This document shows positions 8,205 through 55,300 of a stretch of DNA of 64,000 nt, piece after piece; the stretch's first letter is position 1, and each line of letters opens with the position of its first letter. The position numbers were made by a program, and so were the translations under genes. This DNA is from Octopus sinensis (Eukaryota). The notes below the pieces were generated by a model, which was given only the letters and a program-made list of their open reading frames with translations, was not told the DNA's origin and searched no databases. The stretch lies in contig NC_043014.1 in NCBI RefSeq assembly GCF_006345805.1, positions 29,946,001 to 30,010,000 of the forward strand, read 5' to 3'.

Positions 8205-8487
8205 CTGCAGGGTAGGGAAACCCAAAGAAGGTTCATACGACGGTTTTTAAAATACAAAAAGAGGGAACACACACACACATTTATTTGTGTAGGTGTTTGT
8301 GTGATACATGATTTCGTTGTTTAGGAAATTATCATTTGAATGAGAGAGAGAGAGAGAGAGAGAGAAGGGGGGAGACCAATAACAATAGATTCACAAAAAC
8401 ATAACATTAAAAGAAATAAAAGGTCAATGACGTTAATAACCATATGAGACATAAGGCACACAGTCTTCTAAAACATATTTTTTAATC

Positions 8488-8590
8488 TTGTTTCAGGGTT
8501 TAGACTGCGGCCATGCTGGAGCACTGCCTCGAGGAAATTTAGTCGAACTAATCGACCACAGTACTTATTTCCTTTTTAAGCATGGTACTT
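8488..8590 (-). mobile_element. SINE family 1, 3' fragment
   Basis: TTGTTTCAG...GACTGCGGCCATGCTGGAGCAC is the reverse complement of the family-1 tail. Confidence 0.7.
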
Positions 8591-8650
8591 AATGCGTGAC
8601 ACACACACACACACTATATATATATATATATTATAATATATATATATATA

Positions 8651-18440: not shown

Positions 18441-18688
18441 ATATTATCGAGTTTGAAGCAGAAAGATCTACTGGATACAAATTAATTTATTAATTAATTA
18501 ACATATTCACCTACAATTGTTTCATTTCTCAACCCAAATTAAAACTACAAAACAAAAATATATAATTTTGCATTTTAAAATACCTTGGAGGGAAAATCAT
18601 CCGGGTGCACAAAGGACAATATAAGGATTACATTATGATCCGTTGAGATATTCAGAATATATATAGTCCTGTTTATTATGTGTGTATG

Positions 18689-18755
<67 letters not shown>

Positions 18756-19380
18756 GTGCGCGTGTGTGTATACGCTTTCATATACATACACATATGGTGG
18801 AAGCACTCCGTCGGTTACGACGACGAGGGTTCCGGTTGATCCGAATCAACGGAACAGCCTGCTTGTGAAATTAACGTGTAAGTGGCTGAGCACTCCACAG
18901 ACACGTGTACCCTTAACGTAGTTCTCGGGGATATTCAGCGTGACAAGGCCGGCCCTTTGAAATACAGGTACAACAGAAACAAGAAGTAAGAGTGAGAGAA
19001 AGTTGTGGTGAAAGAGTACAGCAGGGATCACCACCATCCCCTGCCGGAGCCTCGTGGAGCTTTAGGTGTTTTCGCTCAATAAACACTCACAACGCCCGGT
19101 CTGGGAATCGAAATCGCGCCTCCACATATACACACATAATAAACAGGACTATATATATTCTGAATATCTCAACGGATCATAATGTAATCCTTATATTCTC
19201 CCTTGTGTACACTGATGATTTTCCATCCAAGGTATCTTAAAATACAAAATTATATATTTATATATGTTTTGTAGTTTTAATTTTAGTTGAGAGATGAAAC
19301 AATTGTTGGTGAATATGTTAATTAATTAATAAAATTAATCTGTATCCATTAGATCTCTCTGTTTTCAAACTCGATAATAT
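18441..19380. repeat. Inverted repeat with ~250-bp arms (18441-~18690 / ~19126-19380) enclosing (TG)n and a SINE
   Basis: ATATTATCGAGTTTG... pairs with ...CAAACTCGATAATAT, and GTCCTGTTTATTATG pairs with CATAATAAACAGGAC. Moderately diverged. Confidence 0.88.
18795..19125 (-). mobile_element. tRNA-derived SINE family 3 (GTGGAGGCGC head) with a deletion in the tRNA region
   Basis: The reverse complement begins GTGGAGGCGCGATTTCGATTCCCAGACC. Compared with the copy at 19949, roughly 40 bp spanning the A-box and anticodon arm are deleted. Confidence 0.85.
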
Positions 19381-21831: not shown

Positions 21832-22085
21832 AGTGCCGACGGCACGTAAAAAGTACCATTCGAGCGTGATCGGTGCTAGTGCCATCTGACTGATCCCTGT
21901 GCCAGTCACACTTGAAAAGCACTCACTATACTCTCGGAGTGGTTGGCGTTAGGAAGGGCATCCAGCTATAGAAACCTTACCAGAACAGACTGCATTCTCA
22001 TTGCAGTCTCCTGGCTTGCCAGTCCTCAGTCAAACCGTCCAACCCATGCCAGCATGGAACGCAGACATTAAACGATGATGATGAT
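21832..22085 (+). mobile_element. RTE 3' UTR fragment with (GAT)n tail
   Basis: GGTTGGCGTTAGGAAGGGCATCCAGC...CCAACCCATGCCAGCATGG...AAACGATGATGATG. Confidence 0.85.
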
Positions 22086-22656
22086 GTATAATGATATATA
22101 TAATTATGATAGATTGTTACCCATTCAATGTTTAGGCAAACTTCATCACCTACTCACTCTCTTTCTCTTACTCGCTCTTTCTCTCTCACTCATTCCCCCC
22201 ACACACATAAAAATGAAACGCATTTCGGCGCCAAAAATTGTAAAGGAAAAAAATCTATATTCGGGATTATTATATATATTATATCCAGTGATTTTAAAAG
22301 GTATGAAAAAGATATTGTTGTTTTAATATACTTTTACTTGTTTCATACACATACACAAACTAACGAGTTTTTATTTTTAGAATAATTATTTATCATTCGT
22401 TATCTCTCCACTGACTTCGGTACCACTAACTTCTATAACCTCTGCATTTTCACTTATTCATTTCAAACTTCTTTGAATTTTCAATTTAATGTAATCCACA
22501 CTCTCTCGAAAACGTATTTCTGCAAAATGCTATCTAAAATTATGGGTAAAGAAAGAAATGGCAAAAAAATATTTGAAAATGGGGGTGGGGGTGAAATTGC
22601 TGAGGGTTCGACCGTTAGTGAGGTCCTGTACCCATATATGCATGTATATATATATA

Positions 22657-23569: not shown

Positions 23570-25303
23570 AATTTTTTTTAACATTTTGGCCGGGGTGTCC
23601 ACCGGCTACACCGTATAGATTTACTATGTATTTAAGCAGGGTCTCTCACACCCAACTTCTTCGCCACATTTTTCCATCTTTTCTCGTATATACTTCGCGA
23701 CAGGCGTCCTCTCTCCAGCCCTATCTTGCTCTTCAGATGATATCTGAAATAGTAGAGCAAACCAGGCCCGGAGATAAAGGTTCTCGTCGCGACTCCTTTC
23801 ACCCTCGTTTTCCATATGCACTCATTCAGAGTGGCAACTGGCCTCCCTTTCCTTTGACAGTCCGGGTGGCGGTACAATCTTAGTCATACACTCAGCTGAT
23901 AGCTTTACTCTTCCTAAATGCGACAGCATGTGTTCCACCTAAACTATCAGGCTTGAAATCTTCGGATAATGAACAAGGGCGTGCGGGACAGTTTCTCGTC
24001 CCGCCTGCACCTTGGGCAAGCCGGTGGTACGGACATGCCGTGTCTGGACAGTCTATCATGAAAAGTTAAAGCGTTCCTATAGTACTGCCAAGTCAGTGAT
24101 TTCTGGTAGTTATCCAGGTAACCCGACCCGAAAGTTCTTTTAAACAGGTTGGCCAGCTGGTCCTCATCGAGTCCCAGAGCTTCTCCCAGGACGTCATCCC
24201 TCTTGGACTCTACCAGCCCGCTATAGAGTACTGAGGTGGTGTTCTTGCTCTTGGTCTTGCCCGCCTTGTGGATTAGCACGAGAACCTGTCGGCACTCTTT
24301 TTGACACTCGGTAAAATTGCGTCTTTTCACGGAACAAGGTTTAAATTCCTCCAAGGAGGCCAGTCGCGGAAAGAACGTCTCCGCCAGCGAATTCCATACC
24401 TGGTCACCGTCCAGGTAGAGCGAAAGGTGCCTCAGCGCATGATCAGCCACGGCATCCCTAACCCATCCTTAAGCGGGTTTTGGCAGCAAGCAGAGCGCCT
24501 CACAAGCGGTTTTCCTCCCTTCCACAAAAAGCGAAAGAGGAGGCGCTCCAACTTGGTTAGCCACGAATCGAGGCAAGGGACAACGGTCAGACGGTAGGTG
24601 ATAACATATGCGATATACACCTGCACCACCTCCGCCCTCCCTTTCAAGGACTGCGCCCTTCCGGACAAGGTCCGGACTAGAGCCTCCACCTTGCCTTCCA
24701 CTTCACTCCAATCCTTCTCTGTTTGGGAGTCCGGTCCAAACCAAACTCCTAGCAACTTAACAGGACCTTCCGTCCAGTGTCCCACGACACTGGACATTAT
24801 CGTTTTGCCACTCCAGGTGCCGATGGACTTGTCCTTGTTAATTTTTACCCCTTCCACCGCCTCGTAACATTTGATTGCCTCCTCTACATGGGGTAGCTGA
24901 GTTTCATCCGCTACGGTGATGGTGACGTCATCCGCATAAGCAGAAAAGCACTTACCACATCCCAGTCTGTTGGAGATGCACTCCCAAATTCTCCAACTTG
25001 CATAGCAATGGCTCCAGAGCCAGTACATAGAGAAGCGGAGACAGAACGGAGCACTCGATCTTAAACGGCACGGGCAGCTATCCGTTTTTCTGAACCGTAG
25101 ATTTGATGTCACCATAAATGGCGGTGATCCAGCCGCGGACGTCAAGGCCCAGCCCAGCCGCCTTGAGGACCGCCGCTAGATACTGGTGGTCTACCCTGTC
25201 AAATGCTTTACTTTGGTCTAAATGGACCACTGCTCCACCTTTACCGGATAAATTAGCCACCCTGTCTAAGGTGAAGCGCAGGAGATGGAGATTGTCCTGG
25301 ATC
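23570..25303 (-). mobile_element. Tx1-clade (L1 group) LINE, 5'-truncated
   Basis: IQDNLHLLR...LDQSKAFDRVDH, YADDVT, KLLGVWFG, LSLKG-like segment, GLGMPWL, and a zf-RVT-type CPRC. T-rich tail at ~23570. Confidence 0.9.
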
Positions 25304-29492: not shown

Positions 29493-29835
29493 GACGGCGT
29501 GGCTTTGTGGCAAGAAGTTTGCTTTCCAGTCACAATGGTGCCGGGTTCAGTTCTATTGCGTGGTACTTCGGACCCGTGCCCCGAGCCAACCAAAGCTTTG
29601 TGAGTGACAGAAATAGAAAGAAGACCATCATGTGTGTGTGTGACCACCGCTTGACAACTGGTATTGGTTTGTTTACGTTCTTGTAAATTAGCGGTTCGGC
29701 AAAAGACACTGATAGAATAAGTACCAGGCTTAAAAGATAGTTCTGGGGTCGATTTGTTCGACTAAATGCTTCAAGGCGGTGTCCCAGCATGGCCGCAGTC
29801 CAATGAGTGAAACAAATAAAAGATAAAAGATTAAA
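29493..29835 (+). mobile_element. SINE family 1, diverged
   Basis: GGCGTGGCTTTGTGG head and GGCGGTGTCCCAGCATGGCCGCAG...GAAACAAATAAAAGA tail. Confidence 0.8.
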
Positions 29836-30715
29836 GATATCTAAAATAATAAACCAGTTTATTTACTCAGAGACGTCATCAACATGAAAATCAGTAGTTA
29901 AGTTGTTAATAAATTGAATGTAATTGGGAACATCAAATACCTAATTAGAAATACATCAGATCAATATCATTGTATTTGCTTCAGCAGGTACGGGGTGAGG
30001 AAACAATGTTCCGGTCTCATTAGACCTCCAGGCTCAACCCCACTGTTTAGGAACCTAAACAGAGAATCAATAGAGGTGCGAAAAATTAGCATATGTTACA
30101 AAATGAACCACTGAGGTAGACTAATCGCTCGGAGATGCTTAATATTACGTTAATCCTTTTGTTAAGTAGAAAATATTAATATTGGACATGCTTCAGTATT
30201 ATTAAAACTCCTCAGTAAATTATACATTGCCTTTGTCACGAGGGTGTGAGTAATACATATTATGTAGGTCATAGAATGAAAGATAGATGCTGGTGGTGGA
30301 ACTGAGTTCTGTTCTGGCTGCGTGTAAATGATGCACAACACTAGGGAACAATTTTACAGTAACTTTATTCACAAAATATCTTTTACGTTGGTTTTGAATT
30401 AATAATACAACAAAGCATACAAACTGAAAAAGATGATTCTGTAGTTATTACAAAATAGTTGGTTAAATAGGACCTGTTAATATGTTATCACGATGGAAGA
30501 AAAACAAGTAAAAGAATATTCTCAAGATCTCCTTAACAATCTGAAGATTTTTAATCCAGTTAAATCCAATCATAAGTGAGTCATAAAATATCTCAGGAAA
30601 ATATGGCGTCTGAGAAAGCTAAGAGCAGATGGGCAGACAGAAAATGACTTGTCTGTTCCCAGACACATTTATGGTCATCAGCTATTGGAATAGACGAATG
30701 AGGAAAACATATTTA

Positions 30716-32042
30716 GGTACTTGTCTATTGTCGTGGTCCCGGTTTCTCACACGCGAATTCGCCAGACGTAGGTACTCGATACTCGAGATCCTACGAGGTG
30801 ACTTGCGCATGCGCAGTGCAGAATTCGCGCATGCGCGTTAAACCCCCCCCCAAAAAAAAGGTGTTGGATTTCACTAAAAATATGTGTGTGTGTGTATATA
30901 TATAACATTTTCAATTTTACACAAAAAAATTACATAGTCGCTTTCCTCGCGGATTTACAGATAAATGAATTAATTACTATTTTACAGAATAAAATTAATG
31001 AATTAATTATATAAATTAAATAATTCTTGAAAATTAATTAATATTAATAATTTTTTTGAACAAAGTAAATAATTTATAAAACTTGGTTAATAATTTTTTT
31101 TACACAAACGCGAACGTATATAATTTGTGAAACTTTTTTTTTTTTACAGACGTATATAATTTGGTAAACTTAATGAATTAATTTCTTCTCATCATCATCA
31201 TCGTTTAACGTCCGTTCTCCATGCCAGCATGGGTTGGACGGTTCGACCGGGGATCTGGGAAGCCAGAAGGCTGCACCAGACTCCAGTCTTATCTGGCAAT
31301 GTTTCTACAGCTGGATGCCCTTCCTAACGCCAACCACTCCGAGAGTGTAGTGGGTGCTTTTTACATGCCACCCGCACAGGTGCCAGGAGAGGCTGGCAAC
31401 GGCCACGGTCGGATTGGTGCCAGTCGAGGCGGCTCTGGCATCGGCCACGATTCGGATAGTGCTTTTTACGTACCACCAGTCCAGGGGTCCTGGCATTTGC
31501 CGGGTGCCACACTTGCCCCAACATGTCTTCGCAAGCAAAGGGGGTTGGCGTGGGTGCCTGTCGTGGGATGAGGTTCGATATCAACTTCGCTTGCCTCAAC
31601 AGGTCTTTGTGTATAAATGTATAAATTGTTCGCACTAAATTCTTTCCGTAGAATTTATCAAAAAACGCGCAAAATTATTCCGTAGAATTTATCAAATTAA
31701 AAAACGCAAAATTAATATTTTTTGAAATTGCAAATTATTTAGAATATAAAACAAATGAAGTTAAATTTTAAAAATAAATGTCATATACTTATACTCTGTA
31801 AGGTGCTGTGTTCACACTTCAATTTACTATTTTCTAGAAATGTTGCTTTTCTAATTGAAACAATTTTTCTCAATCTCCATTTAAAAGTCCATAATGCCTC
31901 TTGAGACATATCAAAATGAACAACTTTGAATTACGCGGCGGCGGTGGTGGTGGTGGTGTGAGGTTCTAATTTTTTTTCTGATCTCTCTTTGCCCCCCTAG
32001 ATGGAGGTGTGGTGGGGAGACAGATGAAAGATGTTTCATTCT

Positions 32043-32093
<51 letters not shown>

Positions 32094-33589
32094 CTTAAAC
32101 CGACACGATATAGTCTATAAATTTGGGATGTTTTTGAAAGATATATATTTTGTCATCAGAATATATATACTTTCTCACACTACAATTAAGATATATTTAT
32201 TTTAAATCGTTCATCTTTTCCCGCGACAACAAAAATTGGGCGCGAAAATTTTTCTAAATATTAGCGGAATGAACAACTGAAATAAAGAGGGGGCAAAGAG
32301 AGATCAGAAAAAAAAATTAGAACCTCACACCACCACCACCACCGCCGCCGCGTAATTCAAAGTTGTTCATTTTGATATGGCTCAAGAGGCATTATGGACT
32401 TTTAAATGGAGATTGAGAAAAATTGTTTCAATTAGAAAAGCAACATTTCTAGAAAATAGTAAATTGAAGTGTGAACACAGCACCTTACAGAGTATAAGTA
32501 TATGACATTTATTTTTAAAATTTAACTTCATTTGTTTTATATTCTAAATAATTTGCAATTTCAAAAAATATATTAATTTTGCGTTTTTTAATTTGATAAA
32601 TTCTACGGAATAATTTTGCGCGTTTTTTGATAAATTCTACGGAAAGAATTTAGTGCGAACAATTTATACATTATACACAAAGACCTGTTGAGGCAAGCGA
32701 AGTTGATATCGAACCTCATCCCACGACAGGCACCCACGCCAACCCCCTTTGCTTGCGAAGACATGTTGGGGCAAGTGTGGCACCCGGCAAATGCCAGGAC
32801 CCCTGGACTGGTGGTACGTAAAAAGCACTATCCGAATCGTGGCCGATGCCAGAGCCGCCTCGACTGGCACCAATCCGACCGTGGCCGTTGCCAGCCTCTC
32901 CTGGCACCTGTGCGGGTGGCATGTAAAAAGCACCCACTACACTCTCGGAGTGGTTGGCGTTAGGAAGGGCATCCAGCTGTAGAAACATTGCCAGATAAGA
33001 CTGGAGTCTGGTGCAGCCTTCTGGCTTCCCAGATCCCCGGTCGAACCGTCCAACCCATGCTGGCATGGAGAACGGACGTTAAACGATGATGATGATGAGA
33101 AGAAATTAATTCATTAAGTTTACCAAATTATATACGTCTGTAAAAAAAAAAAAAGTTTCACAAATTATATACGTTCGCGTTTGTGTAAAAAAAATTATTA
33201 ACCAAGTTTTATAAATTATTTACTTTGTTCAAAAAATATTATTAATATTAATTAATTTTCAAGAATTATTTAATTTATATAATTAATTCATTAATTTTAT
33301 TCTGTAAAATAGTAATTAATTCATTTATCTGTAAATCCGCGAGGAAAGCGACTATGTAATTTTTTTGTGTAAAATTGAAAATGTTATATATACACACACA
33401 CACATATATATTTTTAGTGAAATCCAACACCTTTTTTTGGGGGGGGGGGTTAACGCGCATGCGCGAATTCTGCACTGCGCATGCGCAAGTCACCTCGTAG
33501 GATCTCGAGTATCGAGTACCTACGTCTGGTGCGCGCGCGCGCTCGAATTCGCGTGTGAGAAACCGGGACCACGACAATAGACAAGTACC
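30716..33589. mobile_element. Foldback DNA element, 2874 bp, ~1.28-kb near-identical TIRs, 8-bp TSD CATATTTA
   Basis: Arms at 30716-~31999 and ~32289-33589 begin and end GGTACTTGTCTATTGTCGTGG. CATATTTA at 30708-30715 and 33590-33597. The ~290-bp spacer contains (TA)n. No ORF. Confidence 0.9.
31192..31610 (-). mobile_element. RTE 3' UTR insertion in the left TIR, mirrored at 32675-33095 on the + strand
   Basis: (CAT)n + CGTTTAACGTCCG...GGATGCCCTTCCTAACGCCAACC; an exact-position inverted counterpart lies in the right arm. Confidence 0.9.
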
Positions 33590-33769
33590 CATATTTATTT
33601 CTAATTAGATTTTTGATGCTCACTATATTAAATCTGCTAAAACTTAAGCTAAAATGAGGGTTAGTTTAATTAAAGACTGTTTAAAAAGAATATTTATAAT
33701 CTTAGGCGCAGCAGTTTAACTACTTGTGAGCCAATTATTAATGAGAATGTATCAAGATCAGAAATGTTT

Positions 33770-38454: not shown

Positions 38455-39860
38455 AAGACAGGCTGGCCTTAAGAGCTCCTCTATGCTGATGACTTTGCGC
38501 TTATACCTGAATCACTTCCTGAGCTAGAGAAGAAGTTCCAGGTATGGAATCAGGGTCTAGAATCAAAGGGCCTTAGAGTTAACCTAGCAAAAACCAAAGT
38601 CATAGTAAGTAGGAAGGCAGACAAATCACAAACCCCCTCAGGTAGATGGCTCTGCTCAATCCGTAGAAACTCCATTAGATGCACCCAGTGTAAGCTTTGG
38701 CTACACATCAAAGGAAGGTTAACAGAGAAATTAACTTTTGTATGTGGAAGGTGCACAGGCATAATAAATGCTGAACATGTGTGGAAAATAGACTCCATCA
38801 ACTGCCGGGGGGGGGGGCAAGCTAGAGGTAGTTGATAGCTTCCAGTATCTAGGCAACCAGGTTAGTAGTAGAAGTAGTTGTTCCAAAAGCATAGCTATGA
38901 GAATAAGATTAAGCTGGATAAGGTTCAGAGAGATTCCTGCCCCTGCTGGCAACAAAGATCTCTCCCTCAAAGTGAAAGGCAGATTGTTTGATGCCATACT
39001 GGGTGGTAGTGAAACATTGACTATGACAGCCAAGGACATGCATAGGCATGAGAGAAATGAAGCCAGTATGCTTCGCTGGATGTGCAATGTCAGTGTGCAT
39101 CTACAACAGAATGTAAGCATCTTGAGAGAAAAGTTAGGCATAAGAGGAATCAGATGTGGTATGCAAGAGAGACAACTGTGCTGATATGTTCATGTGATGC
39201 ATATGGATGAGGACTGTTGTGTAAAGAAGTGCCACGCTCTAACTGTGAAGGGAATCTGTGGTAGAGGTAGTCCCAGGGAAACATGGGACAATTTGGTGAA
39301 GCATGATCTTTGAACTTTGAACTTCACAGAGACAATGACTAGTGATTGAGACTTTTAGTGATGTTCTCTGCTTAAGAGGACCCGTCAAGTCAAGTGCACC
39401 CATGCTGGTGGCACGTAAAAAAAAAAATCAACCTTTGGACATTGGGCCTCATGGAGGCAAAGTGGCTGAGTACCTTTCGAGTGTTGAGCCTCATGGTGGC
39501 AAGGTGGCTGAGTTCCTTTTGAGCAGGCCTCACAGAGGTGAAGTGACTGAGTTCCTTTCGAGTGTTGGGCTTCATGGAGGCAATGACCAAGACCTTTGGC
39601 ATTATGTCGTTCTTGAGAAGAAGACCCATCAAGCTGAGCAAAATTGCAGTTGTGGCAGATATCGGTGTCACACAAATGGCACCTGTGCAGGTGGCACATA
39701 AAATCACCCATTACGCTCTCGGAATGGTTGGGGTTAGGAAGAGCATCCAGCCATAGAAAATCATACCAAATCAGACTGGAGTCTGGTGCAGCCTTCCAGT
39801 GTGCCAGCCCAGTCAAACCAGCTAACCCATGCCAGCATGGACAACAGACATTAAATGATG
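38455..39860 (+). mobile_element. RTE-clade LINE, 5'-truncated, with Cys-rich insert and full 3' UTR
   Basis: ELLYADDFALI...GLESKGLRVNLAKTK, RIRLSWIRFRE, EASMLRWMCNV; 3' UTR ends in (GAT)n. Confidence 0.92.
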
Positions 39861-39969
39861 ATGATAATATATATATATATGTATACACACTTAAATCATG
39901 CTTAACATGGCATGCATATATAGATTTAGATATACATACATACATACATACATATATCATATATATATA

Positions 39970-42900
39970 TATATTTATATGTATATGAATATGTATATAT
40001 ATGCATGCCATATTAAGCATGATTTAAGTATGCAGCAGCAAAAGCTGATAAAGTGCAACGATTATTGAGTTGCTGCTCAGAAAGTCAGAGTCCTTAAAGT
40101 AAATGTTCCATACCTGTGTCATTAAATATATATCTTCGTCATCGTTTTATATTCACTGTCTACACAGGAATACATTTGGATGTTGTCATTGCTTCTTTCT
40201 TAGATAAATAAGAGGATCACTTTCAGTCAGAAGTTTCATTTTCGATTTTTTATGTGGTTTCTCTGGCTGGTTGTCCTTCCTAATACCAATCACTTTACTT
40301 AGTGTACTGAGTATATTTTTTCATGACACTAGCTCTTGGGAGGTTGCTATGTCTTCAACAAGACTAAAGACCCCTCTCAACTCCACTCCTAACAGAATGT
40401 ACTGGGTGTAATTTATTGTGGTAAGAGTTATAGGGAAGACAGAAGTAAAAGAGAGCTAAACAGCAAGAGGTGGACAAAAGGCGAGTATGAATAATAGATA
40501 TTGATAGCAAACGAATAGGGGGTCGCAACATGAGTAGAACATATGTACATGCATACATGATGGGTCCCTTAAGTTTATATCTCATGATGGGCAAGAAAGT
40601 GATAAAGGTAAGAGAGAGCATTACAAGGTGAACAGTAAAAAAAATCTACTGCCATCCTTGAGTCTGAGCTTATATTTACTGGTGTAATGGGTGTGTTGAA
40701 TTTTGTTCCTTTATGACAAGAGGGCAACTTAGTCATTGGCTTGATCTGCTAGAAATAACAGCAAGCAAATCCTTCAAATCTTGTTATCTTAAAAGAGCAC
40801 ATTGAATAATGAGACCTACGTGCATGCCTTGTGCAATGGAAAAAGCGGTTATGAATGGGATAGGCATGGATGGGTTGGATTGTCCTTGATCATTTATTTG
40901 CTTGATCGGTTTCATTTGGAGTCTAAACAACAACAAAAAGCTTGTGATTTAATCATGATCATCATCATTCTCATCATGTAATAATTATTACTACTTCCAC
41001 CACCACCACCACCACTACCATCCCCATCATCGTTTTAATATAGCTGCCACCCTTCCCACCACCACTACCACTGTCACTATCATCAGTATCTTCGCTACTA
41101 TCAAAATCATCAACTTTACCATCACCACCCGCTCCCATTGATATAATAAGTAGAAGATTGATAACAGGCCTGAGTGAAGAAAGATAGAGAGAAAAATGAA
41201 AGAGAACAGAAACAAAGAAGTTATCAGTGTGAGAAGAAAAATATTAATGGCCTTTTGTAAAGTTATTTGCACAGTAAATTAAAAGTATTTATGTTCTTGA
41301 TATTTCAGCTGTTTCTGAATATTCTTTGCTTCTGTGTTACAGTTTATATAAACAGCAAAATACATTCACATTACTTTTTGTACTTCCTCTGTCAGGGAAT
41401 ATAACTTGGTTTTAGCTTTAATGTAACACCTGACTACTAGGAACAATGCACACACACACACACACACACATGTGTGTGTGTATATATATATATATAATAT
41501 ATATATATATATTTATATGTATATGAATATGTATATATATGCATGCCATATTAAGCATGATTTAAGTATGCAGCAGCAAAAGCTGATAAAGTGCAACGAT
41601 TATTGAGTTGCTGCTCAGAAAGTCAGAGTCCTTAAAGTAAATGTTCCATACCTGTGTCATTAAATATATATCTTCGTCATCGTTTTATATTCACTGTCTA
41701 CACAGGAATACATTTGGATGTTGTCATTGCTTCTTTCTTAGATAAATAAGAGGATCACTTTCAGTCAGAAGTTTCATTTTCGATTTTTTATGTGGTTTCT
41801 CTGGCTGGTTGTCCTTCCTAATACCAATCACTTTACTTAGTGTACTGAGTATATTTTTTCATGACACTAGCTCTTGGAAGGTTGCTATGTCTTCAACAAG
41901 ACTAAAGACCCCTCTCAACTCCACTCCTAACAGAATGTACTGGGTGTAATTTATTGTGGTAAGAGTTATAGGGAAGACAGAAGTAAAAGAGAGCTAAACA
42001 GCAAGAGGTGGACAAAAGGCGAGTATGAATAATAGATATTGATAGCAAACGAATAGGGGGTCGCAACATGAGTAGAACATATGTACATGCATACATGATG
42101 GGTCCCTTAAGTTTATATCTCATGATGGGCAAGAAAGTGATAAAGGTAAGAGAGAGCATTACAAGGTGAACAGTAAAAAAAATCTACTGCCATCCTTGAG
42201 TCTGAGCTTATATTTACTGGTGTAATGGGTGTGTTGAATTTTGTTCCTTTATGACAAGAGGGCAACTTAGTCATTGGCTTGATCTGCTAGAAATAACAGC
42301 AAGCAAATCCTTCAAATCTTGTTATCTTAAAAGAGCACATTGAATAATGAGACCTACGTGCATGCCTTGTGCAATGGAAAAAGCGGTTATGAATGGGATA
42401 GGCATGGATGGGTTGGATTGTCCTTGATCATTTATTTGCTTGATCGGTTTCATTTGGAGTCTAAACAACAACAAAAAGCTTGTGATTTAATCATGATCAT
42501 CATCATTCTCATCATGTAATAATTATTACTACTTCCACCACCACCACTACCATCCCCATCATCGTTTTAATATAGCTGCCACCCTTCCCACCACCACTAC
42601 CACTGTCACTATCATCAGTATCTTCGCTACTATCAAAATCATCAACTTTACCATCACCACCCGCTCCCATTGATATAATAAGTAGAAGATTGATAACAGG
42701 CCTGAGTGAAGAAAGATAGAGAGAAAAATGAGAGAGAACAGAAACAAAGAAGTTATCAGTGTGAGAAGAAAAATATTAATGGCCTTTTGTAAAGTTATTT
42801 GCACAGTAAATTAAAAGTATTTATGTTCTTGATATTTCAGCTGTTTCTGAATATTCTTTGCTTCTGTGTTACAGTTTATATAAACAGCAAAATACATTCA

Positions 42901-43119: not shown

Positions 43120-43530
43120 TCGATCAACATCAATGGAAATTGCAGCTGTGGTACCAGTGCTGGTGACAAGTAAGCGAATCATCCGTTCGTGTCCGTTGCC
43201 AGCCTGGCCTGGCCCCCGTGCCAGTGGCATGTAGCACCTTCCATTCATGGCCGTTGCCAGCCTCGCCTGGCCCCCGTGCCGGTGGCATGTAAAAGCACCA
43301 TCCGTTCATGGCCGTTTGCCAGCTCCGTCTGGCACCTGTGCAGGTGTCACATAAAAAGCACCCACTACACTCATGGAGTGGTTGGCATTAGGAAGGGCAT
43401 CCAGCTGTAGAAACACTGCCAGATCAGACTGGGTCTGATGCAGCCTTCTGGCTTCACAGACCCCAGTTGAACCGTCCAACCCATGCTAGCATGGAAAGCA
43501 GACGCTAAATGATGATGATGATGATGATGA
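43120..43530 (+). mobile_element. RTE 3' UTR fragment with internal ~55-bp subrepeats
   Basis: CCGTTGCCAGCCT.GCCTGGCCCCCGTGCC.GTGGCATGTA occurs twice, followed by the standard tail and (GAT)n. Confidence 0.85.
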
Positions 43531-44539: not shown

Positions 44540-45125
44540 TTAGTTAATTTTTTGGCTCAAAAAGCAAAAAGCGAGGCCATGTAGGGGGACATGGAGTTAT
44601 GTACAGGGTGGTGTTCATGTAAAGAGTTCAGGCCACTTGTGGTCAAGGAAGACTTTGAACCGAGCGGTCGTCGGCATCTTTACCATCTCATTCGGCAGCT
44701 TATTCCACGGATCCGCAACCCGGACGGAGAAAGCCCCTCTCCTTGAGTGAGATGAAATCGTCGCAGATAGAGCTTTTCGGAATGACCCTGCAGCCAATGC
44801 TCTGGAGCAGGAGTGAAGAACAGCTCTTTCGAGAGGTTACACTTTCCGCTTATGATGTTGTGAGCAAGAATGAGATCACCACGGCGTCGGCGTTTTTCTA
44901 GAGAATAAAGGTCAAGCGTCTTCAGACTTTCTTCATAAGACAAATTCTTGAGACCAAGAACCATGCGGGTAGCCAGCTTCTGGACTCTTTCGAGATGCTG
45001 TATGTCTTTGAGGAGATAAAGAGAAGAGGCTTGAATCCCGTACTCCAATATGGATCTCACCAGCGTGACATAGAGCGGTAGGAATATGGCTGCTGTGAGC
45101 ATTCTGAATATGTGCACCCCATGCT
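44540..45125 (-). mobile_element. CR1-type LINE 3' end (distinct subfamily)
   Basis: LYVTLVRSILEYG...LERVQKLATRMV..L..LSYEE.LK.LDLYSLEKRRRRGDLI...RVADPWNKLP. Confidence 0.92.
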
Positions 45126-46589: not shown

Positions 46590-46982
46590 CTAGCAGTATC
46601 GCCCGGCGTTGTTCGGGTTTGTAAGGGAAATAACTATATAAGCATTTTTAGAGATGTAAAGTATAATAGCCATCTCAATATGGCTAACCACAAAGGGGGG
46701 TGTTACTGTAGCTTTTTACGTCCTGAGATTTAATAATACATTTTTAGAGAGTTACTTCCCTTGTATAATTGCAAAAAAATGCATTAAAAATGGGAAAATG
46801 ATGGTAAATTTTTTTTTAAATCGTAGACTCATTGTAGGCGCGCGCTAATACCCAGAAGGGCTCGATGTGAATCACGACTATAAGATACCCGCTTTTGGTT
46901 ACACATCACCACAAAATGTGGGAGTAGTTAGGAATCTAAATCGTAGGAGACAGACACACAACTTCACTTTTATATATAAAGA
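46590..46982 (-). mobile_element. Non-autonomous Helitron, 393 bp
   Basis: On the minus strand: 5' TC start, 3' CCCG-AACAACGC-CGGG hairpin then CTAG. Inserted between A and T with no TSD; the empty site is visible in the opposite arm. Confidence 0.88.
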
Positions 46983-47304
46983 TATGAAACAGAGAGTGAA
47001 GTGGAGGAATGAAAATAGATGTGAAATATGCAGGGATATTGCATTTGTAGATCCATTATTTAGGCAGAATGGTATACATATAAGATTCCAATGGTATACA
47101 TATAAGATTTACAATGACCAGTTTTAAATACTATTGGAATTTACTCACAAGGTATTGGAATCTTATATGTATACCATTCTGCCTAAATAATGGATCTACA
47201 AATGCAATATCCCTGCATATCTCACATCTATTTTCATTCCTCTACTTCACTCTCTATTTCGTATCTTATCTAAATTAACTATTGCTTAACCATTTTCTCA
47301 CACC

Positions 47305-48833: not shown

Positions 48834-49333
48834 ACTCCATTATAAGTCTTTTAGCAAGAATGAAAGAATCATATGTCTGTTGCTATTCTTGTAGCAGAAT
48901 GAACTTAGGGAAAAAATACTTCAACTACAATTTGGAGTAGCAGAAGAGAATAACAATGGAGGTCATGCAATGGTAATATAGCTACATTTATCTATTTTCT
49001 TATCACCATCAAAAGATCTAATGCAGCTAGTATACTACGTCCACTAAGAATTAAAATCACAGCTAGAACTTAACTGTCAATTCCCAGTGGTTTTTAATTC
49101 TCAGTGGACATAGTATACTAGTTGCATTAGATCTTTTGATGATGATAAGGAGATAGATAAATGCAGCTATATTACCATCTCATGACCCCTATTGTTATTC
49201 GCTTCTGCCACTCCAAATTGTAGTTGAAGTATTTTCTCCTTACGTCCATTCTGCTACAATTATAGCAACAGGCATGTGATTCTTTTATTCTCTAGTTCTG
49301 ATGAAAAATTTGCTAAAAAAATTATAATGGAGT
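48834..49333. repeat. Inverted repeat with ~230-245-bp arms and 26-bp spacer
   Basis: ACTCCATTATAA...AGAATTAAAATCAC pairs with GTGGTTTTTAATTCT...TTATAATGGAGT; diverged. Confidence 0.88.
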
Positions 49334-49482
49334 GTCCTGTATGTCAAAAACTTATATGGTCTTACACATCCAAGGAAGGTGGTGTATTTCAAATTGATGC
49401 AATGCTTGCATTGATCGATTAAATGGAGCCACCTGAAACGGCCATAATGCACTAATACCTTGACATCCTTGTTACTTATTTG

Positions 49483-49530
<48 letters not shown>

Positions 49531-49604
49531 ATGTATGTATGTATATATATATATATACACATAAATTGATCAAAATAAAATAAAAACATGATGCGAAGGA
49601 TTCA

Positions 49605-49682
49605 GCGGTACATATGTTTCGGGCCTTTATTAGACAGATTTATAACAATGCATAATGTATGTCTGTGGCCTTCTTCAGCCGC
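49605..49682 (-). ncRNA. Minimal type I hammerhead ribozyme, copy 1
   Basis: GCGG-CTGAAGA-aGGCC...GGCCc-GAAA-C atat G-TA-CCGC on the minus strand. Confidence 0.72.
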
Positions 49683-52116
49683 GCACAACAGCTTCCACAA
49701 GGACATGTGTTACATCAAAAATTCTTGGTTGGGGATGCAAATCCTCTCATTCACGTACGACATAATGCGGCAGCAGCATAGAATTGAAGCGTCCATCTCT
49801 TTCTTCTCTCAATGTAGAATGAGGAAAATTGGATGTTGAGGTAATGTAAATAAATAAATACATATATAGAGGTGAAGATGGAGGGGCGAGAGTTCGGGAC
49901 GAGGGATAAAAAATGTATAAAAAGTGTAAGTATAGAATAATATAAAAATGTAGAGGATAAAGATATAAAGAGTTGTAAGGAGATGTAAAGGGGGTATAAA
50001 GAAATATAAATAAATGTAAAGGCATAAGGTTATAAAGTAAAAATAGAAATAGAAATAAAAGTAAAAAAACCTGATAAAAGCATGATAAAAGTGTAAAAGA
50101 ATGTAAAGATAAGGGATGTATAGAGGTTACAGACCAAGCATGGTGGTCAGGAGATTGATAAAATTTAGTTGTAGAATTGTCAGTAAATCAACAGTTTCGT
50201 CTGGGGACCTAATGCGTTGTAAATCAGAGCTGATGAGCATTTAATCTGGTTCCTTGAATTAAATGGACTTCTAGTACATACATATCATCATGGATACATA
50301 CACCCACATACACGCGTACACATACGCCTCCAAGCCTATAAGCATACACACGCACTCGCGTGTAAACACGTACATAAACACACACGCACCCACACGCACG
50401 CGCGTACACACACATACATACAACAGAATATCCGCATGTATACGCGGACATTATACGCGTACACACTCACATGTATATACGCGCGCCCATCACTACATAC
50501 ACACACGTAATGCCCACGCCTCTAGGTCTAGGTATAAGATATTAAAGGATGTGTATAAGAACGTATTTAAAGAATCCCGTACTCATGTCTATACGTGCAC
50601 GCACACACGGCTGTGTGTCCGTATGTGCGTGCACATATACACTCATATACAAACACAGAGACAGAGACACATGCGCACATGGGTATAGCTATAAGATATC
50701 GAAGTATGCATGTACATATATGCGTGTGCATATGTATGTATGCGTATACACACGTACGCGGACGCTCGTATAGTCAATAAGTGGATCCATAGGTAAGTAA
50801 ATAAACATATATAGAGGTTTAAAGCGATAAGTTATGGGTAAGAATGAGGGTAAGGGTAAAGATTAGAAATAAAAAATACAGTATAAAATAAGAAATACAA
50901 TGTAATAGTTAGAAATGAAATATAAGAATTATAAAAATTATAAGAGTTAAGGTAAGGGATGAAAATAAAAATGAGAATAAATGGAAGTAGAATAAAAGCA
51001 AAAATAAAATTAAAAATAAAGATAAATGGAAGTAGGATAAAAGTAAAAATAAAAGTAAAAAAAAAAATAAAAATAACATAAAATAAGATAAAAATATAAT
51101 TTGGTAAAGTTTAACATGAGAGATGAAGTTGGTTGAAAGTTAGAGGTGTGTGTTAAACGTAGGGGCGGGCGGGGGAACTGAAAATGGGAAGGGTGGGAAG
51201 TGGAAGTTGAGTTTGGCGGTGTGCGTTCGACATCCGAGTTAGAAATGTGAAAGGGTATAGATATAGGGAATTAAAGAGACTACATAGGGAGGATATGGGT
51301 GTAGGAGAAGAAATATTTAGGGAAAAGAAGTCATATATGGGAGACAAAATTTGTATATATAGGAGGAAAATGCAGGGAACCGTATATGCACATACACACA
51401 CCCACACACACACACACACACTCACCTGTACATATATGTATATATGTACACATACGTACACGTATGTGCACATACATACGCACACACACACACACATATA
51501 CACGCACATATAAGAAATCGGGATGTGCTGGAGCCGACAGGTTGCACCGGGTGGGAGGAAATTGCATGTGCAATATATATAATTCCCTATATCTATACCC
51601 TTTCACATTTCTAACTCTGATGTGCAAAGATCTAATGCAGCTAGTATACTACGTCCACTAAGAATTAAAATCACAGCTAGAACTTAACTGTCAATTCCCA
51701 GTGGTTTTTAATTCTCAGTGGACATAGTATACTAGTTGCATTAGATCTTTTGATGATGATAAGGAGATAGATAAATGCAGCTATATTACCATCTCATGAC
51801 CCCTATTGTTATTCGCTTCTGCCACTCCAAATTGTAGTTGAAGTATTTTCTCCTTACGTCCATTATGCTACAATTATAGCAACAGGCATGTGATTCTTTT
51901 ATTCTCTAGTTCTGATGAAAAATTTGCTAAAAAAATTATAATGGAGTGTCCTGTATGTCAAAAACTTATATGGTCTTACACATCCAAGGAAGGTGGTGTA
52001 TTTCAAATTGATGCAATGCTTGCATTGATCGATTAAATGGAGCCACCTGAAACGGCCATAATGCACTAATACCTTGACATCCTTGTTACTTATTTGTGTT
52101 TTATATTATAATATAT

Positions 52117-52169
<53 letters not shown>

Positions 52170-52246
52170 ATGTATGTATGTATATATATATATATATATA
52201 CACATAAATTGATCAAAATAAATAAAAACATGATGCGAAGGATTCA

Positions 52247-52324
52247 GCGGTACATATGTTTCGGGCCTTTATTAGACAGATTTATAACAATGCATAATGT
52301 ATGTCTGTGGTCTTCTTCAGCCAC
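52247..52324 (-). ncRNA. Minimal type I hammerhead ribozyme, copy 2 (one stem I G-U wobble, one stem II mismatch)
   Basis: GTGG-CTGAAGA-aGACC...GGCCc-GAAA-CATATG-TA-CCGC. Confidence 0.62.
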
Positions 52325-55300
52325 GCACAACAGCTTCCACAAGGACATGTGTTACATCAAAAATTCTTGGTTGGAGATGCAAATCCTCTCATTCACGTAC
52401 GACATAATGCGGCAGCAGCATAGAATTGAAGCGTCCATCTCTTTCTTCTCTCAATGTAGAATGAGGAATATTGGATGTTGAGGTAATGTAAATAAATAAA
52501 TACATATATAGAGGTGAAGATGGAGGGGCGAGAGTTCGGGACGAGGGATAAAAATGTATAAAAAGTGTAAGTATAGAATAATATAAATGTAGAGGATAAA
52601 GATATAAAGAGTTGTAAGGAGATGTAAAGGGGGTATAAAGAAATATAAAGAAATATAAATAAATATAAAGGCATAAGGTTATAAAGTAAAAATAGAAATA
52701 GAAATAAAGTAAAAAAACCTGATAAAAGCATGATAAAAGTGTAAAAGAATGTAAAGATAAGGGATGTATAGAGGTACAGACCAAGCATGGTGGTCAGGAG
52801 ATTGATAAATTTTTTGTAGAATTGTCAGTAAATCAACAGTTTCGTCTGGGGACCTAATGCGTTGTAAATCAGAGCTGATGAGCATTTAATCTGGTTCCTT
52901 GAATTAAATGGACTTCTAGTACATACATATCATCATGGATACATACACCCACATACACGCGTACACATACGCCTCCAGCCTATAAGCATACACACGCACT
53001 CGCGTGTAAACACGTACATAAACACACACGCACCCACACGCACGCGCGTACACACACATACATACAACAGAATATCCGCATGTATACGCGGACATTATAC
53101 GCTGTACACACTCACATGTATATACGCGCGCCCATCACTACATACACACACGTATATGCCCACGCCTCTAGGTCTAGGTATAAGATATTAAAGGATGTGT
53201 ATAAGAACGTATTTAAAGAATCCCGTACTCATGTCTATACGTGCACGCACACACGGCTGTGTGTCCGTATGTGCGTGCACATATACACTCATATACACAC
53301 ACAGAGACAGAGACACACGCGCACATGGGTATAGCTATAAGATATCGAAGTATGCATGTACATATATGCGTGTGCATATGTATGTATGCGTATACACACG
53401 TACGCGGACGCTCGTATAGTCAAAAAGTGGATCCATAGGTAAGTAAATAAACATATATAGAGGTGTAAAGCGATAAGTTATGGGTAAGAATGAGGGTAAG
53501 GGTAAAGATTAGAAATAAAAAATACAGTATAAAATAAGAAATACAATGTATAGTTAGAAATGAAATATAGAATTATAAAAATTATAAGAGTTAAGTAAGG
53601 GATGAAAAAAAAATGAGAATAAATGGAAGTAGAATAAAAGTAAAAATAAAATTAAAAATAAAGATAAATGGAAGTAGGATAAAGTAAAAATAAAAGTAAA
53701 AATAAAAATAAAAAATACATAAATAAGATAAAAATATATTTGGTAAAGTTTAACATGAGATGAAGTTGGTTGAAAGTTAGAGGTGTGTGTTAAACGTAGG
53801 GGCGGGGGGGGGGGAACTGAAAATTGGAAGGGTGGGAAGTGGAGTTTGGCGGTGTGCGTTCGACATCCGAGTTAGAAATGTGAAAGGGTATAGATATAGG
53901 GAATTAAAGAGACTACATAGGGAGGATATGGGTGTAGGAGAAAAATATTTAGGGAAAAGAAGTCATATATGGGAGACAAAATTTGTATATATAGGAGGAA
54001 AATGCAGGGACCGTATATGCACATACACACACCCACCACACACACACACATTCACATGTACATATATGTATATATGTACACATACGTACACGTATGTGCA
54101 CATACATACGCACACACACACACATACACATATACACGCACATATAGGAAATCGGGATGTGCTGGAGCCGACAGGTTGCACCGGGTGGGGAAATTGCACG
54201 TGCAATTCCTCCCACCCGGTGCAACCTGTCGGCTCCAGCACATCCCGATTTCCTATATGTGCGTGTATATGTGTATGTGTGTGTGTGTGGCGTATGTATG
54301 TGCACATACGTGTACGTATGTGTACATATATACATATATGTACATGTGAATGTGTGTGTGTGTGTGTGGGTGTGTGTATGTGCATATACGGTTCCCTGCA
54401 TTTTCCTCCTATATATACAAATTTTGTCTCCCATATATGACTTCTTTTCCCTAAATATTTCTTCTCCTACACCCATATCCTCCCTATGTAGTCTCTTTAA
54501 TTCCCTATATCTATACCCTTTCACATTTCTAACTCGGATGTCGAACGCACACCGCCAAACTCCACTTCCCACCCTTCCAATTTTCAGTTCCCCCCGCCCG
54601 CCCCTACGTTTAACACACACCTCTAACTTTCAACCAACTTCATCTCATGTTAAACTTTACCAAATTATATTTTTATCTTATTTTATGTTATTTTTATTTT
54701 TATTTTTAATTTTATTTTTACTTTTATTCTACTTCCATTTATTCTCATTTTTATTTTCATCCTTACCTTAACTCTTATAATTTTTATAATTCTTATATTT
54801 CATTTCTAACTATTACATTGTATTTCTTATTTTATACTGTATTTTTATTTCTAATCTTTACCCTTACCCTCTTCACCATAACTTATCGCTTTACACCTCT
54901 ATATATGTTTATTTACTTACCTATGGATCCACTTTTTGACTATACGAGCGTCCGCGTACGTGTGTATACGCATACATACATATGCACACGCATATATGTA
55001 CATGCATACTTCGATATCTTATAGCTATACCCATGTGCGCGTGTGTCTCTGTCTCTGTGTGTGTATATGAGTGTATATGTGCACGCACATACGGACACAC
55101 AGCCGTGTGTGCGTGCACGTATAGACATGAGTACGGGATTCTTAAATACGTTCTTATACACATCCTTTAATATCTTATACCTAGACCTAGAGGCGTGGGC
55201 ATATACGTGTGGTATGTAGTGATGGGCGCGCGTATATACATGTGAGTGTGTACGCGTATAATGTCCGCGTATACATGCGGATATTCTGTTGTATGTATGT

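What the first reader, a model, noticed from the sequence alone, without database searches (positions are those of the whole stretch)
30708..33597. 2.87-kb foldback transposon with 1.28-kb TIRs, an 8-bp TSD, and the same LINE insertion mirrored in both arms
Seen: CATATTTA flanks an element whose arms are near-identical inverted copies, and both arms contain the same ~420-bp RTE 3' UTR fragment at the mirror position. Two independent insertions at mirrored sites are implausible. Inference: either the arms were homogenised by intramolecular conversion or repair after the insertion, or one end was rebuilt by fold-back synthesis and the product then transposed, since the TSD is intact. GG termini with an 8-bp TSD fit Merlin or MULE/Foldback superfamilies, but no transposase is present to decide.
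Basis: partly seen in the sequence, partly recalled or inferred. Interest (0 to 1): 0.75.

Follow-up and report, generated by a model that had tools for sequence, protein, structure and literature searches.

The report
Octopus foldback transposon with mirrored retroposon
This is a real but fairly ordinary piece of octopus "jumping DNA": a 2.9-kb gene-less transposon made almost entirely of two mirror-image 1.3-kb arms, each holding the same older retroposon because one arm was copied onto the other.

Summary
An exact 8-bp direct repeat, CATATTTA (30708-30715 and 33590-33597), flanks a 2,874-bp element (30716-33589). Its arms (30716-31996 and 32289-33589) are inverted copies that differ by one substitution, a 14-bp (GC)n indel and a few length changes in simple-sequence runs. 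A 292-bp non-palindromic loop separates them.

Each arm holds the same ~430-bp retroposon at the mirror position, with no differences between the two copies. Protein hits show it belongs to an abundant Octopus repeat, so the window is octopus DNA. The "RTE 3' UTR" label could not be verified.

The element has no transposase and no Pfam domain in the three + strand frames. The terminal 21-mer occurs only at the two outer ends.

Best reading: a non-autonomous, foldback-type cut-and-paste transposon whose inverted repeats were extended or homogenised after the retroposon landed in one arm. This process is already described for Galileo in Drosophila. GG termini plus an 8-bp TSD fit Merlin best, but the superfamily is unproven.

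No second copy and no empty site could be found with the collections available. An assembly artefact is unlikely.

Verdict: new member of a known kind, moderate to low interest.

The parts
30708..30715 (.). Left copy of the 8-bp target-site duplication, CATATTTA
   Evidence: Sequence read. The chance of an exact 8/8 repeat at fixed positions is ~3-5e-5.
30716..33589 (.). Whole foldback-type non-autonomous element (2,874 bp)
   Evidence: No ORF longer than 116 aa, and the longest ORFs lie in the retroposon. No Pfam domain in the three + strand frames, which by symmetry cover both strands of the arms.
30716..31996 (+). Left arm (long terminal inverted repeat, 1,281 bp), starting GGTACTTGTCTATTGTCGTGG
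   Evidence: Global alignment to the reverse complement of the right arm shows 1 substitution plus low-complexity indels.
30716..30840 (+). GC-rich terminal domain with repeated or palindromic motifs: GGTACT(T/C)G at positions 1 and 56, CGCGAATTCG twice, GCGCATGCGC twice. These are candidate transposase-binding sites (inference).
   Evidence: k-mer analysis of the terminal 175 bp.
31185..31615 (-). Octopus retroposon nested in the left arm. Its sense strand is the minus strand, and its (GAT)n tail points to the left terminus.
   Evidence: 100% identical to the right-arm copy and 80-90% identical to dispersed copies in the window and in O. vulgaris. Its ORF hits Octopus vulgaris and O. bimaculoides proteins.
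31997..32288 (.). Non-palindromic loop (middle domain, 292 bp). It contains (TA)23.5 at 32045-32091 and a piece of another dispersed octopus repeat at 32081-32253.
   Evidence: 78.6-79.5% identity to L003:15073-15257 of O. vulgaris.
32289..33589 (-). Right arm (1,301 bp), the reverse complement of the left arm
32672..33102 (+). Mirror copy of the same retroposon in the right arm (sense strand +, tail towards the right terminus)
33530..33543 (.). 14-bp (GC)n-type insert present only in the right arm. It is the largest difference between the arms.
33590..33597 (.). Right copy of the 8-bp target-site duplication, CATATTTA

Best explanation
This is a genuine insertion of a non-autonomous, foldback-type (very long TIR) cut-and-paste DNA transposon in an octopus genome.

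Shown:
- Two identical GG-starting termini in inverted orientation are flanked by an exact 8-bp target-site duplication.
- The element has no coding capacity.
- About 90% of the element is two 1.28-1.30-kb mirror arms around a 292-bp unique middle.
- Each arm carries the same ~430-bp octopus retroposon at the mirror position, with its tail pointing outwards.

Inferred mechanism:
- A shorter-TIR ancestor carried internal sequence that had already received one retroposon insertion.
- Recombinational repair or gene conversion then used one arm as template for the other. The conversion tract ran past the original TIR into the interior, so internal sequence including the retroposon became part of both arms ("TIR extension by recruitment of internal sequence").
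- Whether this happened at this locus after insertion, or in a progenitor copy that then transposed here, cannot be decided from one copy.
- Mobilisation would need a transposase supplied in trans that binds the GC-rich terminal ~125 bp. GG termini plus an 8-bp TSD make Merlin the best-fitting superfamily and MULE the second.
- One substitution in 1,281 bp implies that the arms were last identical roughly 0.1 Myr ago. This is an order-of-magnitude figure, using the calibration JC 0.09 = 25 Myr from PMC13282606.
For: - Exact TSD and termini. Chance of the TSD is 3-5e-5.
- The terminal 21-mer occurs only at the two outer ends, with 0 expected by chance.
- The arm alignment shows 1 substitution plus low-complexity indels.
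- The flanks are unrelated to each other, and the loop is asymmetric.
- No ORF longer than 116 aa and no Pfam hit.
- The retroposon is a dispersed octopus repeat. The near-full-length relative L001:14360-13833 has the same 5' end.
- The arm copy carries subfamily variants and about 2-3 private variants, present in both arms.
- Literature: the Merlin definition is GG termini with an 8-9 bp TSD (PMC8101967). Merlin, hAT, Mutator and unclassified TIR families are recently active in O. vulgaris (PMC13282606). In Galileo, the TIRs within a copy are 98-100% identical and are extended by recruitment of internal sequence through DSB repair templated by the other TIR (PMC3573991). Foldback architecture arises independently in several superfamilies (PMC4079207).
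Against: - No second copy of the arm-specific sequence was found in the other 61 kb of the window, in 163 kb of O. vulgaris DNA, or in the protein, metagenome or prokaryote collections. These samples are tiny or irrelevant for an octopus genome of roughly 2.8 Gb (my figure, not from a tool), so family status and mobility are not demonstrated.
- No empty site was available.
- The arms lack the internal tandem sub-repeats typical of Drosophila FB and Galileo.
- Arms of 1.28 kb are far longer than the 24-462 bp reported for Merlin TIRs.
- The higher density of arm differences in the outer 185 bp may only reflect hypermutable tracts.
Confidence: 0.72

Rival explanations
1. One-ended fold-back (snap-back) synthesis. 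A broken element carrying one end, its interior and the retroposon folded back on itself and was copied. This created the second arm in one step, and the palindromic product then transposed to this site.
For: The arms are almost identical. Both outer ends are the same sequence. The same window holds a spacerless ~2-kb palindrome centred at ~54202, so fold-back duplication may occur in this genome.
Against: Snap-back products normally have a very short or absent spacer. Here the loop is 292 bp, is asymmetric, contains a piece of another dispersed repeat, and its centre (32142) does not coincide with the self-complementary (TA)n tract at 32045-32091. The intact TSD does not show that transposition followed arm formation.
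Confidence: 0.13
2. Composite of two complete copies of a ~1.4-kb element lying head-to-head, mobilised through their two outer ends (a double-Ds or macrotransposon type of structure).
For: Such composites are known for Ac/Ds and P elements (established knowledge). The outer ends are identical.
Against: Each unit would need its own inner terminus. The terminal 21-mer has no further match in the window even with 3 mismatches. The inner ends of the arms (...TCTCTTTGCCCCC) bear no resemblance to the termini.
Confidence: 0.03
3. Not a transposon: a local inverted duplication produced by replication template switching, with the 8-bp flanking repeat arising by chance or as junction microhomology.
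For: No second copy was found. Another inverted duplication lies 20 kb away.
Against: An exact 8-bp direct repeat that abuts both ends of the inverted repeat has a chance of ~3-5e-5. A template-switch duplication would invert pre-existing local sequence, yet neither flank continues into the arms. The GC-rich, motif-repeating termini look like transposase-binding ends.
Confidence: 0.05
4. Assembly artefact: a palindromic chimeric long read or a mis-join.
For: Palindromic artefacts exist in long-read data (general knowledge). A spacerless palindrome elsewhere in the window raises the question for this assembly.
Against: An artefactual fold-back would also invert the flank and would not rejoin a different right flank with a matching TSD. 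The arms differ by a 14-bp indel, a substitution and several tract lengths. The loop is 292 bp of unique sequence, not an adapter.
Confidence: 0.04
5. Two independent insertions of the same retroposon into the two arms.
For: The retroposon is very abundant: 45 HSPs of its core in 163 kb of O. vulgaris DNA, from loci that were chosen through this repeat.
Against: The two copies have exactly mirrored positions, identical 5' ends, identical sub-repeat number and 0 differences in 431 bp. Different genomic copies differ by 4-20% and in sub-repeat number.
Confidence: 0.01

Closest known systems
Galileo two-TIR elements ('2T' and '2RT' copies) of Drosophila (P superfamily; PMC3573991)
   Same: Non-autonomous copies made almost entirely of long TIRs of 0.3-1.25 kb. 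The arms of one copy are 98-100% identical. TIRs are extended by recruitment of internal sequence into both arms, giving TIR1-F1-F1'-TIR2 with a unique middle. This is exactly the architecture needed to mirror a nested insertion.
   Different: Galileo has 7-bp TSDs, a known P-like transposase and often tandem sub-repeats in the arms. Here the TSD is 8 bp, the termini start with GG, no tandem sub-repeats are present, the host is a cephalopod, and the recruited segment includes a retroposon.
Merlin superfamily non-autonomous elements (Feschotte 2004, as summarised in PMC8101967)
   Same: Conserved terminal 5'-GG-3' and an 8- or 9-bp TSD. Long TIRs (up to 462 bp) have been reported. Merlin families are recently active in O. 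vulgaris (PMC13282606, Table 1).
   Different: The arms here are about 3 times longer than the longest reported Merlin TIR. No DDE_Tnp_IS1595 transposase or cognate autonomous copy was found or could be searched for.
Foldback elements: Drosophila FB, Tetris, nematode Tm1 (mostly Mutator-related; PMC4079207, PMC3169594)
   Same: Element dominated by long inverted arms around a short middle domain. No ORF. TSDs of 8-10 bp in Tetris.
   Different: Classical FB and Tetris arms are built of tandem repeats and have 9-10-bp TSDs. The arms here are unique sequence plus a nested retroposon.
Octopus SINE-like and RTE-mobilised retroposons (PMC9115989, PMC13282606)
   Same: The nested insert is a high-copy octopus repeat with a trinucleotide (GAT)n tail. 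This is consistent with RTE-type 3' ends and with the SINE fraction that makes up ~11.6% of the O. vulgaris genome.
   Different: I could not align it to an RTE LINE 3' end. No tRNA-like head was detected, and the copies vary in an internal sub-repeat of ~65-94 bp.

Membership tests
Cut-and-paste TIR DNA transposon (non-autonomous) | Terminal inverted repeats at both ends | tested here: met
   The first 46 bp are identical at both ends, and the arms align over 1,281/1,301 bp.
Cut-and-paste TIR DNA transposon (non-autonomous) | Target-site duplication of fixed length directly abutting the termini | tested here: met
   CATATTTA is 8/8 identical on both sides. The chance is 3-5e-5.
Cut-and-paste TIR DNA transposon (non-autonomous) | Multiple dispersed copies sharing the termini, with different TSDs | tested here: inconclusive
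   None were found in the rest of the window or in 163 kb of O. vulgaris DNA. No octopus genome could be searched by DNA. The metagenome scans were empty and the prokaryote scans gave only chance 18-mer matches; neither collection would be expected to hold octopus DNA.
Cut-and-paste TIR DNA transposon (non-autonomous) | Empty site (a single CATATTTA) in an allele, paralogue or orthologue | not testable with these tools
   No paralogous site exists in the window. No orthologous locus was retrievable.
Foldback-type element (structural class) | Long inverted arms make up most of the element, with a short middle domain and no ORF | tested here: met
   Arms total 2,582 of 2,874 bp (90%) and the loop is 292 bp. 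No coding capacity.
Foldback-type element (structural class) | Arms internally made of tandem sub-repeats (Drosophila FB, Tetris, Galileo F/G) | tested here: not met
   TRF finds only microsatellites and very short repeats in the arms. The only other repeats are short duplicated motifs.
Merlin superfamily | 8- or 9-bp TSD | tested here: met
   The TSD is 8 bp. Definition from PMC8101967.
Merlin superfamily | Conserved terminal 5'-GG-3' | tested here: met
   Both ends read GGTACTTG.... Definition from PMC8101967.
Merlin superfamily | DDE_Tnp_IS1595 transposase in the element, or in a cognate autonomous copy sharing the TIRs | not testable with these tools
   The element itself has no Pfam hit. 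A cognate autonomous copy cannot be sought without a searchable octopus genome.
hAT superfamily | 8-bp TSD together with short TIRs that start with the YARNG motif | tested here: not met
   The TSD length fits, but the termini read GGTAC. The YARNG motif is taken from established knowledge, not from a tool.
Mutator/MULE (includes most foldback elements) | TSD usually 9-11 bp (8-10 bp in Tetris) | tested here: inconclusive
   8 bp is at the lower edge of the range (PMC4079207). One copy cannot give a TSD length distribution.
P superfamily (P element, Galileo) | 7-8-bp TSD, with THAP-transposase binding sites in the TIRs | tested here: inconclusive
   The TSD length is compatible with P (8 bp) but not with Galileo (7 bp; PMC3573991). 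No sequence similarity could be tested.
RTE-derived retroposon (the nested insert) | 3' end homologous to an RTE LINE 3' UTR | not testable with these tools
   No RTE sequence was at hand. The RTE-2_OV paper's supplements hold no matching sequence. RT fragments in the window are not joined to any copy of this repeat.
RTE-derived retroposon (the nested insert) | Dispersed high-copy repeat ending in a short simple-repeat tail | tested here: met
   Four other copies lie in the window and many in O. vulgaris loci, all ending in (GAT)n.

The most novel reading that the evidence does not exclude
The element belongs to a still-active, Merlin-mobilised foldback family in cephalopods, whose kilobase arms are kept identical by ongoing intra-element gene conversion. 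When transcribed, it forms a ~1.28-kb near-perfect RNA hairpin. The predicted MFE is -2429 kcal/mol and the longest perfect helix is 471 bp. Such a hairpin could serve as a strong substrate for the ADAR editing or small-RNA machinery that is unusually prominent in octopus.
Probability: 0.08. Interest if true: 0.55.

Novelty: new member of a known kind. Interest (0 to 1): 0.3.

Why it matters
If the family exists genome-wide, this copy is a clean natural example of how long inverted repeats grow. A nested retroposon acts as a built-in marker showing that interior sequence was copied from one arm to the other. The single arm-to-arm substitution dates that event to roughly the last 10^5 years.

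It would add a foldback-type DNA transposon to the octopus repeat catalogue. A full-text search for octopus, foldback and transposon together returned no paper. It would also give a candidate non-autonomous partner for the recently active Merlin or unclassified TIR families reported in O. vulgaris.

Long perfect palindromes are also hotspots for breakage, inversion and dsRNA formation, so such elements matter for genome stability and possibly for RNA editing. In itself, though, the structure is explained by mechanisms already described in Drosophila.

Tried and rejected
1. Looked for other copies through proteins.
- The 105-aa ORF over the right terminus (33275-33592, minus strand) is not on record and has no homologue among 5.8 billion proteins.

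2. Scanned for exact TIR k-mers.
- The metagenome collection gave 0 hits.
- The prokaryote genome collection gave 0 hits and then 4 hits. The 4 are chance matches of an 18-mer in 596 Gb: about 17 are expected, and they lie in unrelated MAGs.

3. Fetched eight 20-kb O. vulgaris loci through retroposon-derived proteins and searched them with BLAST.
- They contain no arm-specific match. The only hit is to a repeat piece in the loop.

4. Tried to reach an empty site.
- No paralogue of the joined flanks exists in the window.
- The nearby RT ORF has no orthologue; the best hit is 59% identical.
- Two further nearby ORFs are not on record.

5. Searched for a coding remnant.
- Pfam on the three + strand frames of the element found nothing. 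By symmetry these frames cover both strands of the arms.

6. Searched Rfam and tRNA models over the element.
- Rfam gave only one sub-threshold snoRNA-like chance hit at the left junction.
- No tRNA was found in the window.

7. Tried to date the retroposon against a consensus.
- The sample is too small and has subfamily structure. It gives only a weak hint that the insert predates the last arm homogenisation.

8. Searched literature full text for the TIR and retroposon k-mers, and the supplements of the RTE-2_OV paper. Nothing was found.

9. Rejected readings:
- head-to-head composite (no inner termini);
- two independent insertions;
- missed-adapter or chimeric-read palindrome (asymmetric loop, differing arms, distinct flanks with a TSD).
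Full report

Yes. The plain sequence shows ...GAGGAAAA-CATATTTA-GGTACTTGTCTATTG... on the left and ...CAATAGACAAGTACC-CATATTTA-TTTCTAAT... on the right. The 8-bp direct repeat therefore occupies 30708-30715 and 33590-33597, and the element spans 30716-33589 (2,874 bp).

The repeat finder reports long inverted pairs that are 100% complementary across this span. A global alignment of the left half against the reverse complement of the right half defines three parts:
- a left arm at 30716-31996 (1,281 bp);
- a right arm at 32289-33589 (1,301 bp);
- a loop at 31997-32288 (292 bp) that is not palindromic.

The arms differ by:
- one substitution (31906);
- a 14-bp (GC)n-type insert found only in the right arm (33530-33543);
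- six small length or phase differences, all in homopolymer, (TG)n/(TA)n or A/T runs.

An exact 8/8 direct repeat at fixed positions has a chance of about 3-5 x 10^-5 with the local base composition. The terminal 21-mer occurs only at the two ends of the element in the whole window, even when 3 mismatches are allowed, and none of 100 shuffles gave a match. The two flanks are unrelated to each other.

**2. The mirrored insert**

Left-arm bases ~31185-31615 and right-arm bases 32672-33102 are reverse complements with 0 differences in 431 bp. This segment matches four other places in the window at 80-87% identity: 1770-2116, 21896-22086, 39677-39868 and 43181-43524.

All copies end in a (GAT)n tail and share a ~190-230-bp 3' core. 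Upstream of the core lies a variable number of ~65-94-bp sub-repeats.

The 116-aa ORF of the segment hits eight "Hypothetical predicted protein [Octopus vulgaris]" entries and one O. bimaculoides entry. The window is therefore octopus DNA, and the insert is an abundant octopus retroposon.

In O. vulgaris DNA fetched through those proteins, L001:14360-13833 is a near-full-length relative. It has the same 5' start (...AAGACCTGTTGAGGCAAGCGAAG) and the same subfamily variants. The ~430-bp piece in the arms is therefore a near-complete unit with a genuine retroposon 5' boundary.

In both arms the tail points outwards. The two arm copies share position, 5' end, sub-repeat number and about 2-3 private variants, whereas independent copies differ by 4-20%. 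Two separate insertions can be dismissed.

I could not verify that the insert is an "RTE 3' UTR". None of the RT fragments in the window (1180-1728 and 23947-25145) is joined to a copy. No RTE sequence was available to me, and the RTE-2_OV paper's supplements hold no matching string. A trinucleotide tail is consistent with RTE-type mobilisation, but that rests on established knowledge, not on a test made here.

**3. Anatomy of the element**

- The outermost ~125 bp are GC-rich and carry repeated or palindromic motifs: GGTACT(T/C)G at positions 1 and 56, CGCGAATTCG twice and GCGCATGCGC twice. I take these as candidate transposase-binding sites. This is inference.
- Next come a C-run/A-run, a (TG)n(TA)n tract and AT-rich unique sequence.
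- The retroposon follows, and then ~380 bp of AT-rich unique sequence.
- The loop contains (TA)23.5 at 32045-32091. It also holds a ~175-bp piece that is 79% identical to L003:15073-15257 of O. vulgaris, which is another dispersed repeat.
- No ORF exceeds 116 aa, and the longest ones are retroposon ORFs.
- The three + strand frames, scanned with stops masked, hit no Pfam family. By symmetry these frames cover both strands of the arms.
- Rfam and tRNA scans are negative.

**4. What it is**

The combination of identical inverted termini, an exact abutting TSD, no coding capacity and arms making up 90% of the length is the signature of a non-autonomous cut-and-paste element with foldback architecture.

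An assembly artefact is unlikely for three reasons:
- A chimeric palindromic read would also invert the flank and would not rejoin a different right flank behind a matching TSD.
- The arms differ by a 14-bp indel, a substitution and several tract lengths.
- The loop is 292 bp of unique, asymmetric sequence.

A head-to-head pair of complete elements is rejected because there is no inner copy of the terminus. A transposon-independent inverted duplication would have to produce the 8-bp flanking repeat by chance, and it would not explain termini that are unrelated to either flank.

**5. How the mirror image arose**

The published behaviour of Galileo in Drosophila mojavensis fits point for point:
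- Its non-autonomous "2-TIR" copies are 1.7-2.2 kb.
- The two TIRs of one copy are 98-100% identical.
- TIRs grow by "recruitment of internal sequences". The authors explain this by repair of a break in one TIR using the other TIR as template, with a tract that runs on into the interior. The result is TIR1-F1-F1'-TIR2 around a remaining unique middle (PMC3573991).

Applied here, the sequence of events would be:
- A retroposon landed once in the interior next to one TIR.
- A later conversion or repair tract copied that interior, retroposon included, to the other side.
- The 292-bp loop is what is left of the original middle.

It normally leaves little or no spacer, and the centre of symmetry (32142) does not lie in the self-complementary (TA)n tract.

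In-situ extension after insertion leaves the TSD intact as well. Only other family members can order the events.

With one substitution in 1,281 bp, and the calibration in PMC13282606 (JC 0.09 = 25 Myr), the arms were last identical about 0.1 Myr ago. With a single event the range is roughly 0.003-0.6 Myr. This is a rough inference.

**6. Superfamily**

The Merlin superfamily is defined by TIRs of 24-462 bp with a conserved terminal 5'-GG-3' and an 8- or 9-bp TSD (PMC8101967). Both diagnostic features are met here.

O. vulgaris has two Merlin families with recent insertions. It also has 21 hAT, 21 Mutator and 49 unclassified TIR families (PMC13282606, Table 1).

- hAT shares the 8-bp TSD, but its YARNG termini are not present. 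That motif comes from established knowledge.
- MULE and foldback families usually give 9-11-bp TSDs, or 8-10 bp in Tetris (PMC4079207), so 8 bp is borderline.
- Foldback architecture evolves independently in different superfamilies (PMC4079207), so arm length says nothing about membership.

Without a cognate transposase, Merlin is a best guess (about 40-50%), not a classification.

**7. What could not be done**

No collection at hand allows a DNA search of an octopus genome. These routes were tried:
- ORF-based routes;
- k-mer scans of metagenomes and prokaryote genomes (the four 18-mer hits are chance);
- BLAST of 163 kb of O. vulgaris DNA;
- attempts to reach an orthologous locus.

None gave a second copy or an empty site. 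Family status, copy number, the distribution of the retroposon among copies and the autonomous partner remain open.

**8. Novelty and score**

The structure is real and neatly informative, because the nested retroposon marks the copied tract. Every component is already known: foldback-type non-autonomous elements, intra-element homogenisation, TIR extension by recruitment of interior sequence, and Merlin-like ends.

It appears undescribed for cephalopods; a full-text search for octopus, foldback and transposon together found no paper. I rate it a new member of a known kind, with interest about 0.3.

The most novel reading not excluded is an active, conversion-maintained foldback family whose transcripts form a ~1.28-kb perfect hairpin and feed octopus ADAR or small-RNA pathways. 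The predicted MFE is -2429 kcal/mol, 1,275 of 1,281 left-arm bases pair with the right arm, and the longest perfect helix is 471 bp. I give this reading about 8%.

Noticed in passing
window 48857-56155: A second, larger inverted-repeat complex. A ~2.6-kb unit is tandemly duplicated (49012-51574 and 51626-54206, 96% identical) and followed by an inverted copy (54193-56155, 97.8%). Together they form a spacerless palindrome centred at ~54202 on GCACGTGC. No TSD or termini were analysed. It could be a fold-back duplication, a satellite-like array or an assembly problem.
   Followed up: partly
window ~3260-7660: About 4.4 kb of compound (TA)n/(TG)n-type microsatellite with ~19% GC and strong strand skew. 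It produces long spurious ORFs rich in Y, I, C and V.
   Followed up: no
window 46979-47267; 48857-49291; 18556-19259: Three small hairpin or MITE-like inverted repeats, with arms of 114, 200 and 132 nt. Their termini are unrelated to the GGTACTTG ends of the studied element. No clear TSD was seen at the reported arm boundaries, on a brief look only.
   Followed up: partly
window 40364-40621 and 41902-42159: Identical 85-aa ORFs lie 1,538 bp apart, which indicates a recent tandem duplication of ~1.5 kb.
   Followed up: no
L002:3683-4597 (O. vulgaris OX597840.1): The 3' ~130 bp of the same retroposon is present as a head-to-tail array of ~137-bp units, at least six units at ~90% identity to the arm copy. 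This may be a small satellite born from the retroposon.
   Followed up: no
window 29648-29830, 57173-57341, 60114-60290, 61897-62041, 2402-2581, 8476-8591: A second dispersed repeat family of ~180 bp, with copies 72-79% identical. One copy lies ~900 bp left of the insertion site.
   Followed up: no
window 1180-1728 (-), 23947-25145 (-), 44680-45117 (-): Degraded non-LTR retrotransposon fragments. RVT_1 and zf-RVT Pfam hits occur in the first two, and 23947-25145 has a frameshift between two overlapping ORFs. The best database relative of the 24432-25145 ORF is only 59% identical.
   Followed up: partly
window 32081-32253 and L003:15073-15257: The loop of the element contains a ~175-bp piece of yet another octopus dispersed repeat, 79% identical to an O. 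vulgaris locus. The middle domain is therefore itself a mosaic.
   Followed up: partly
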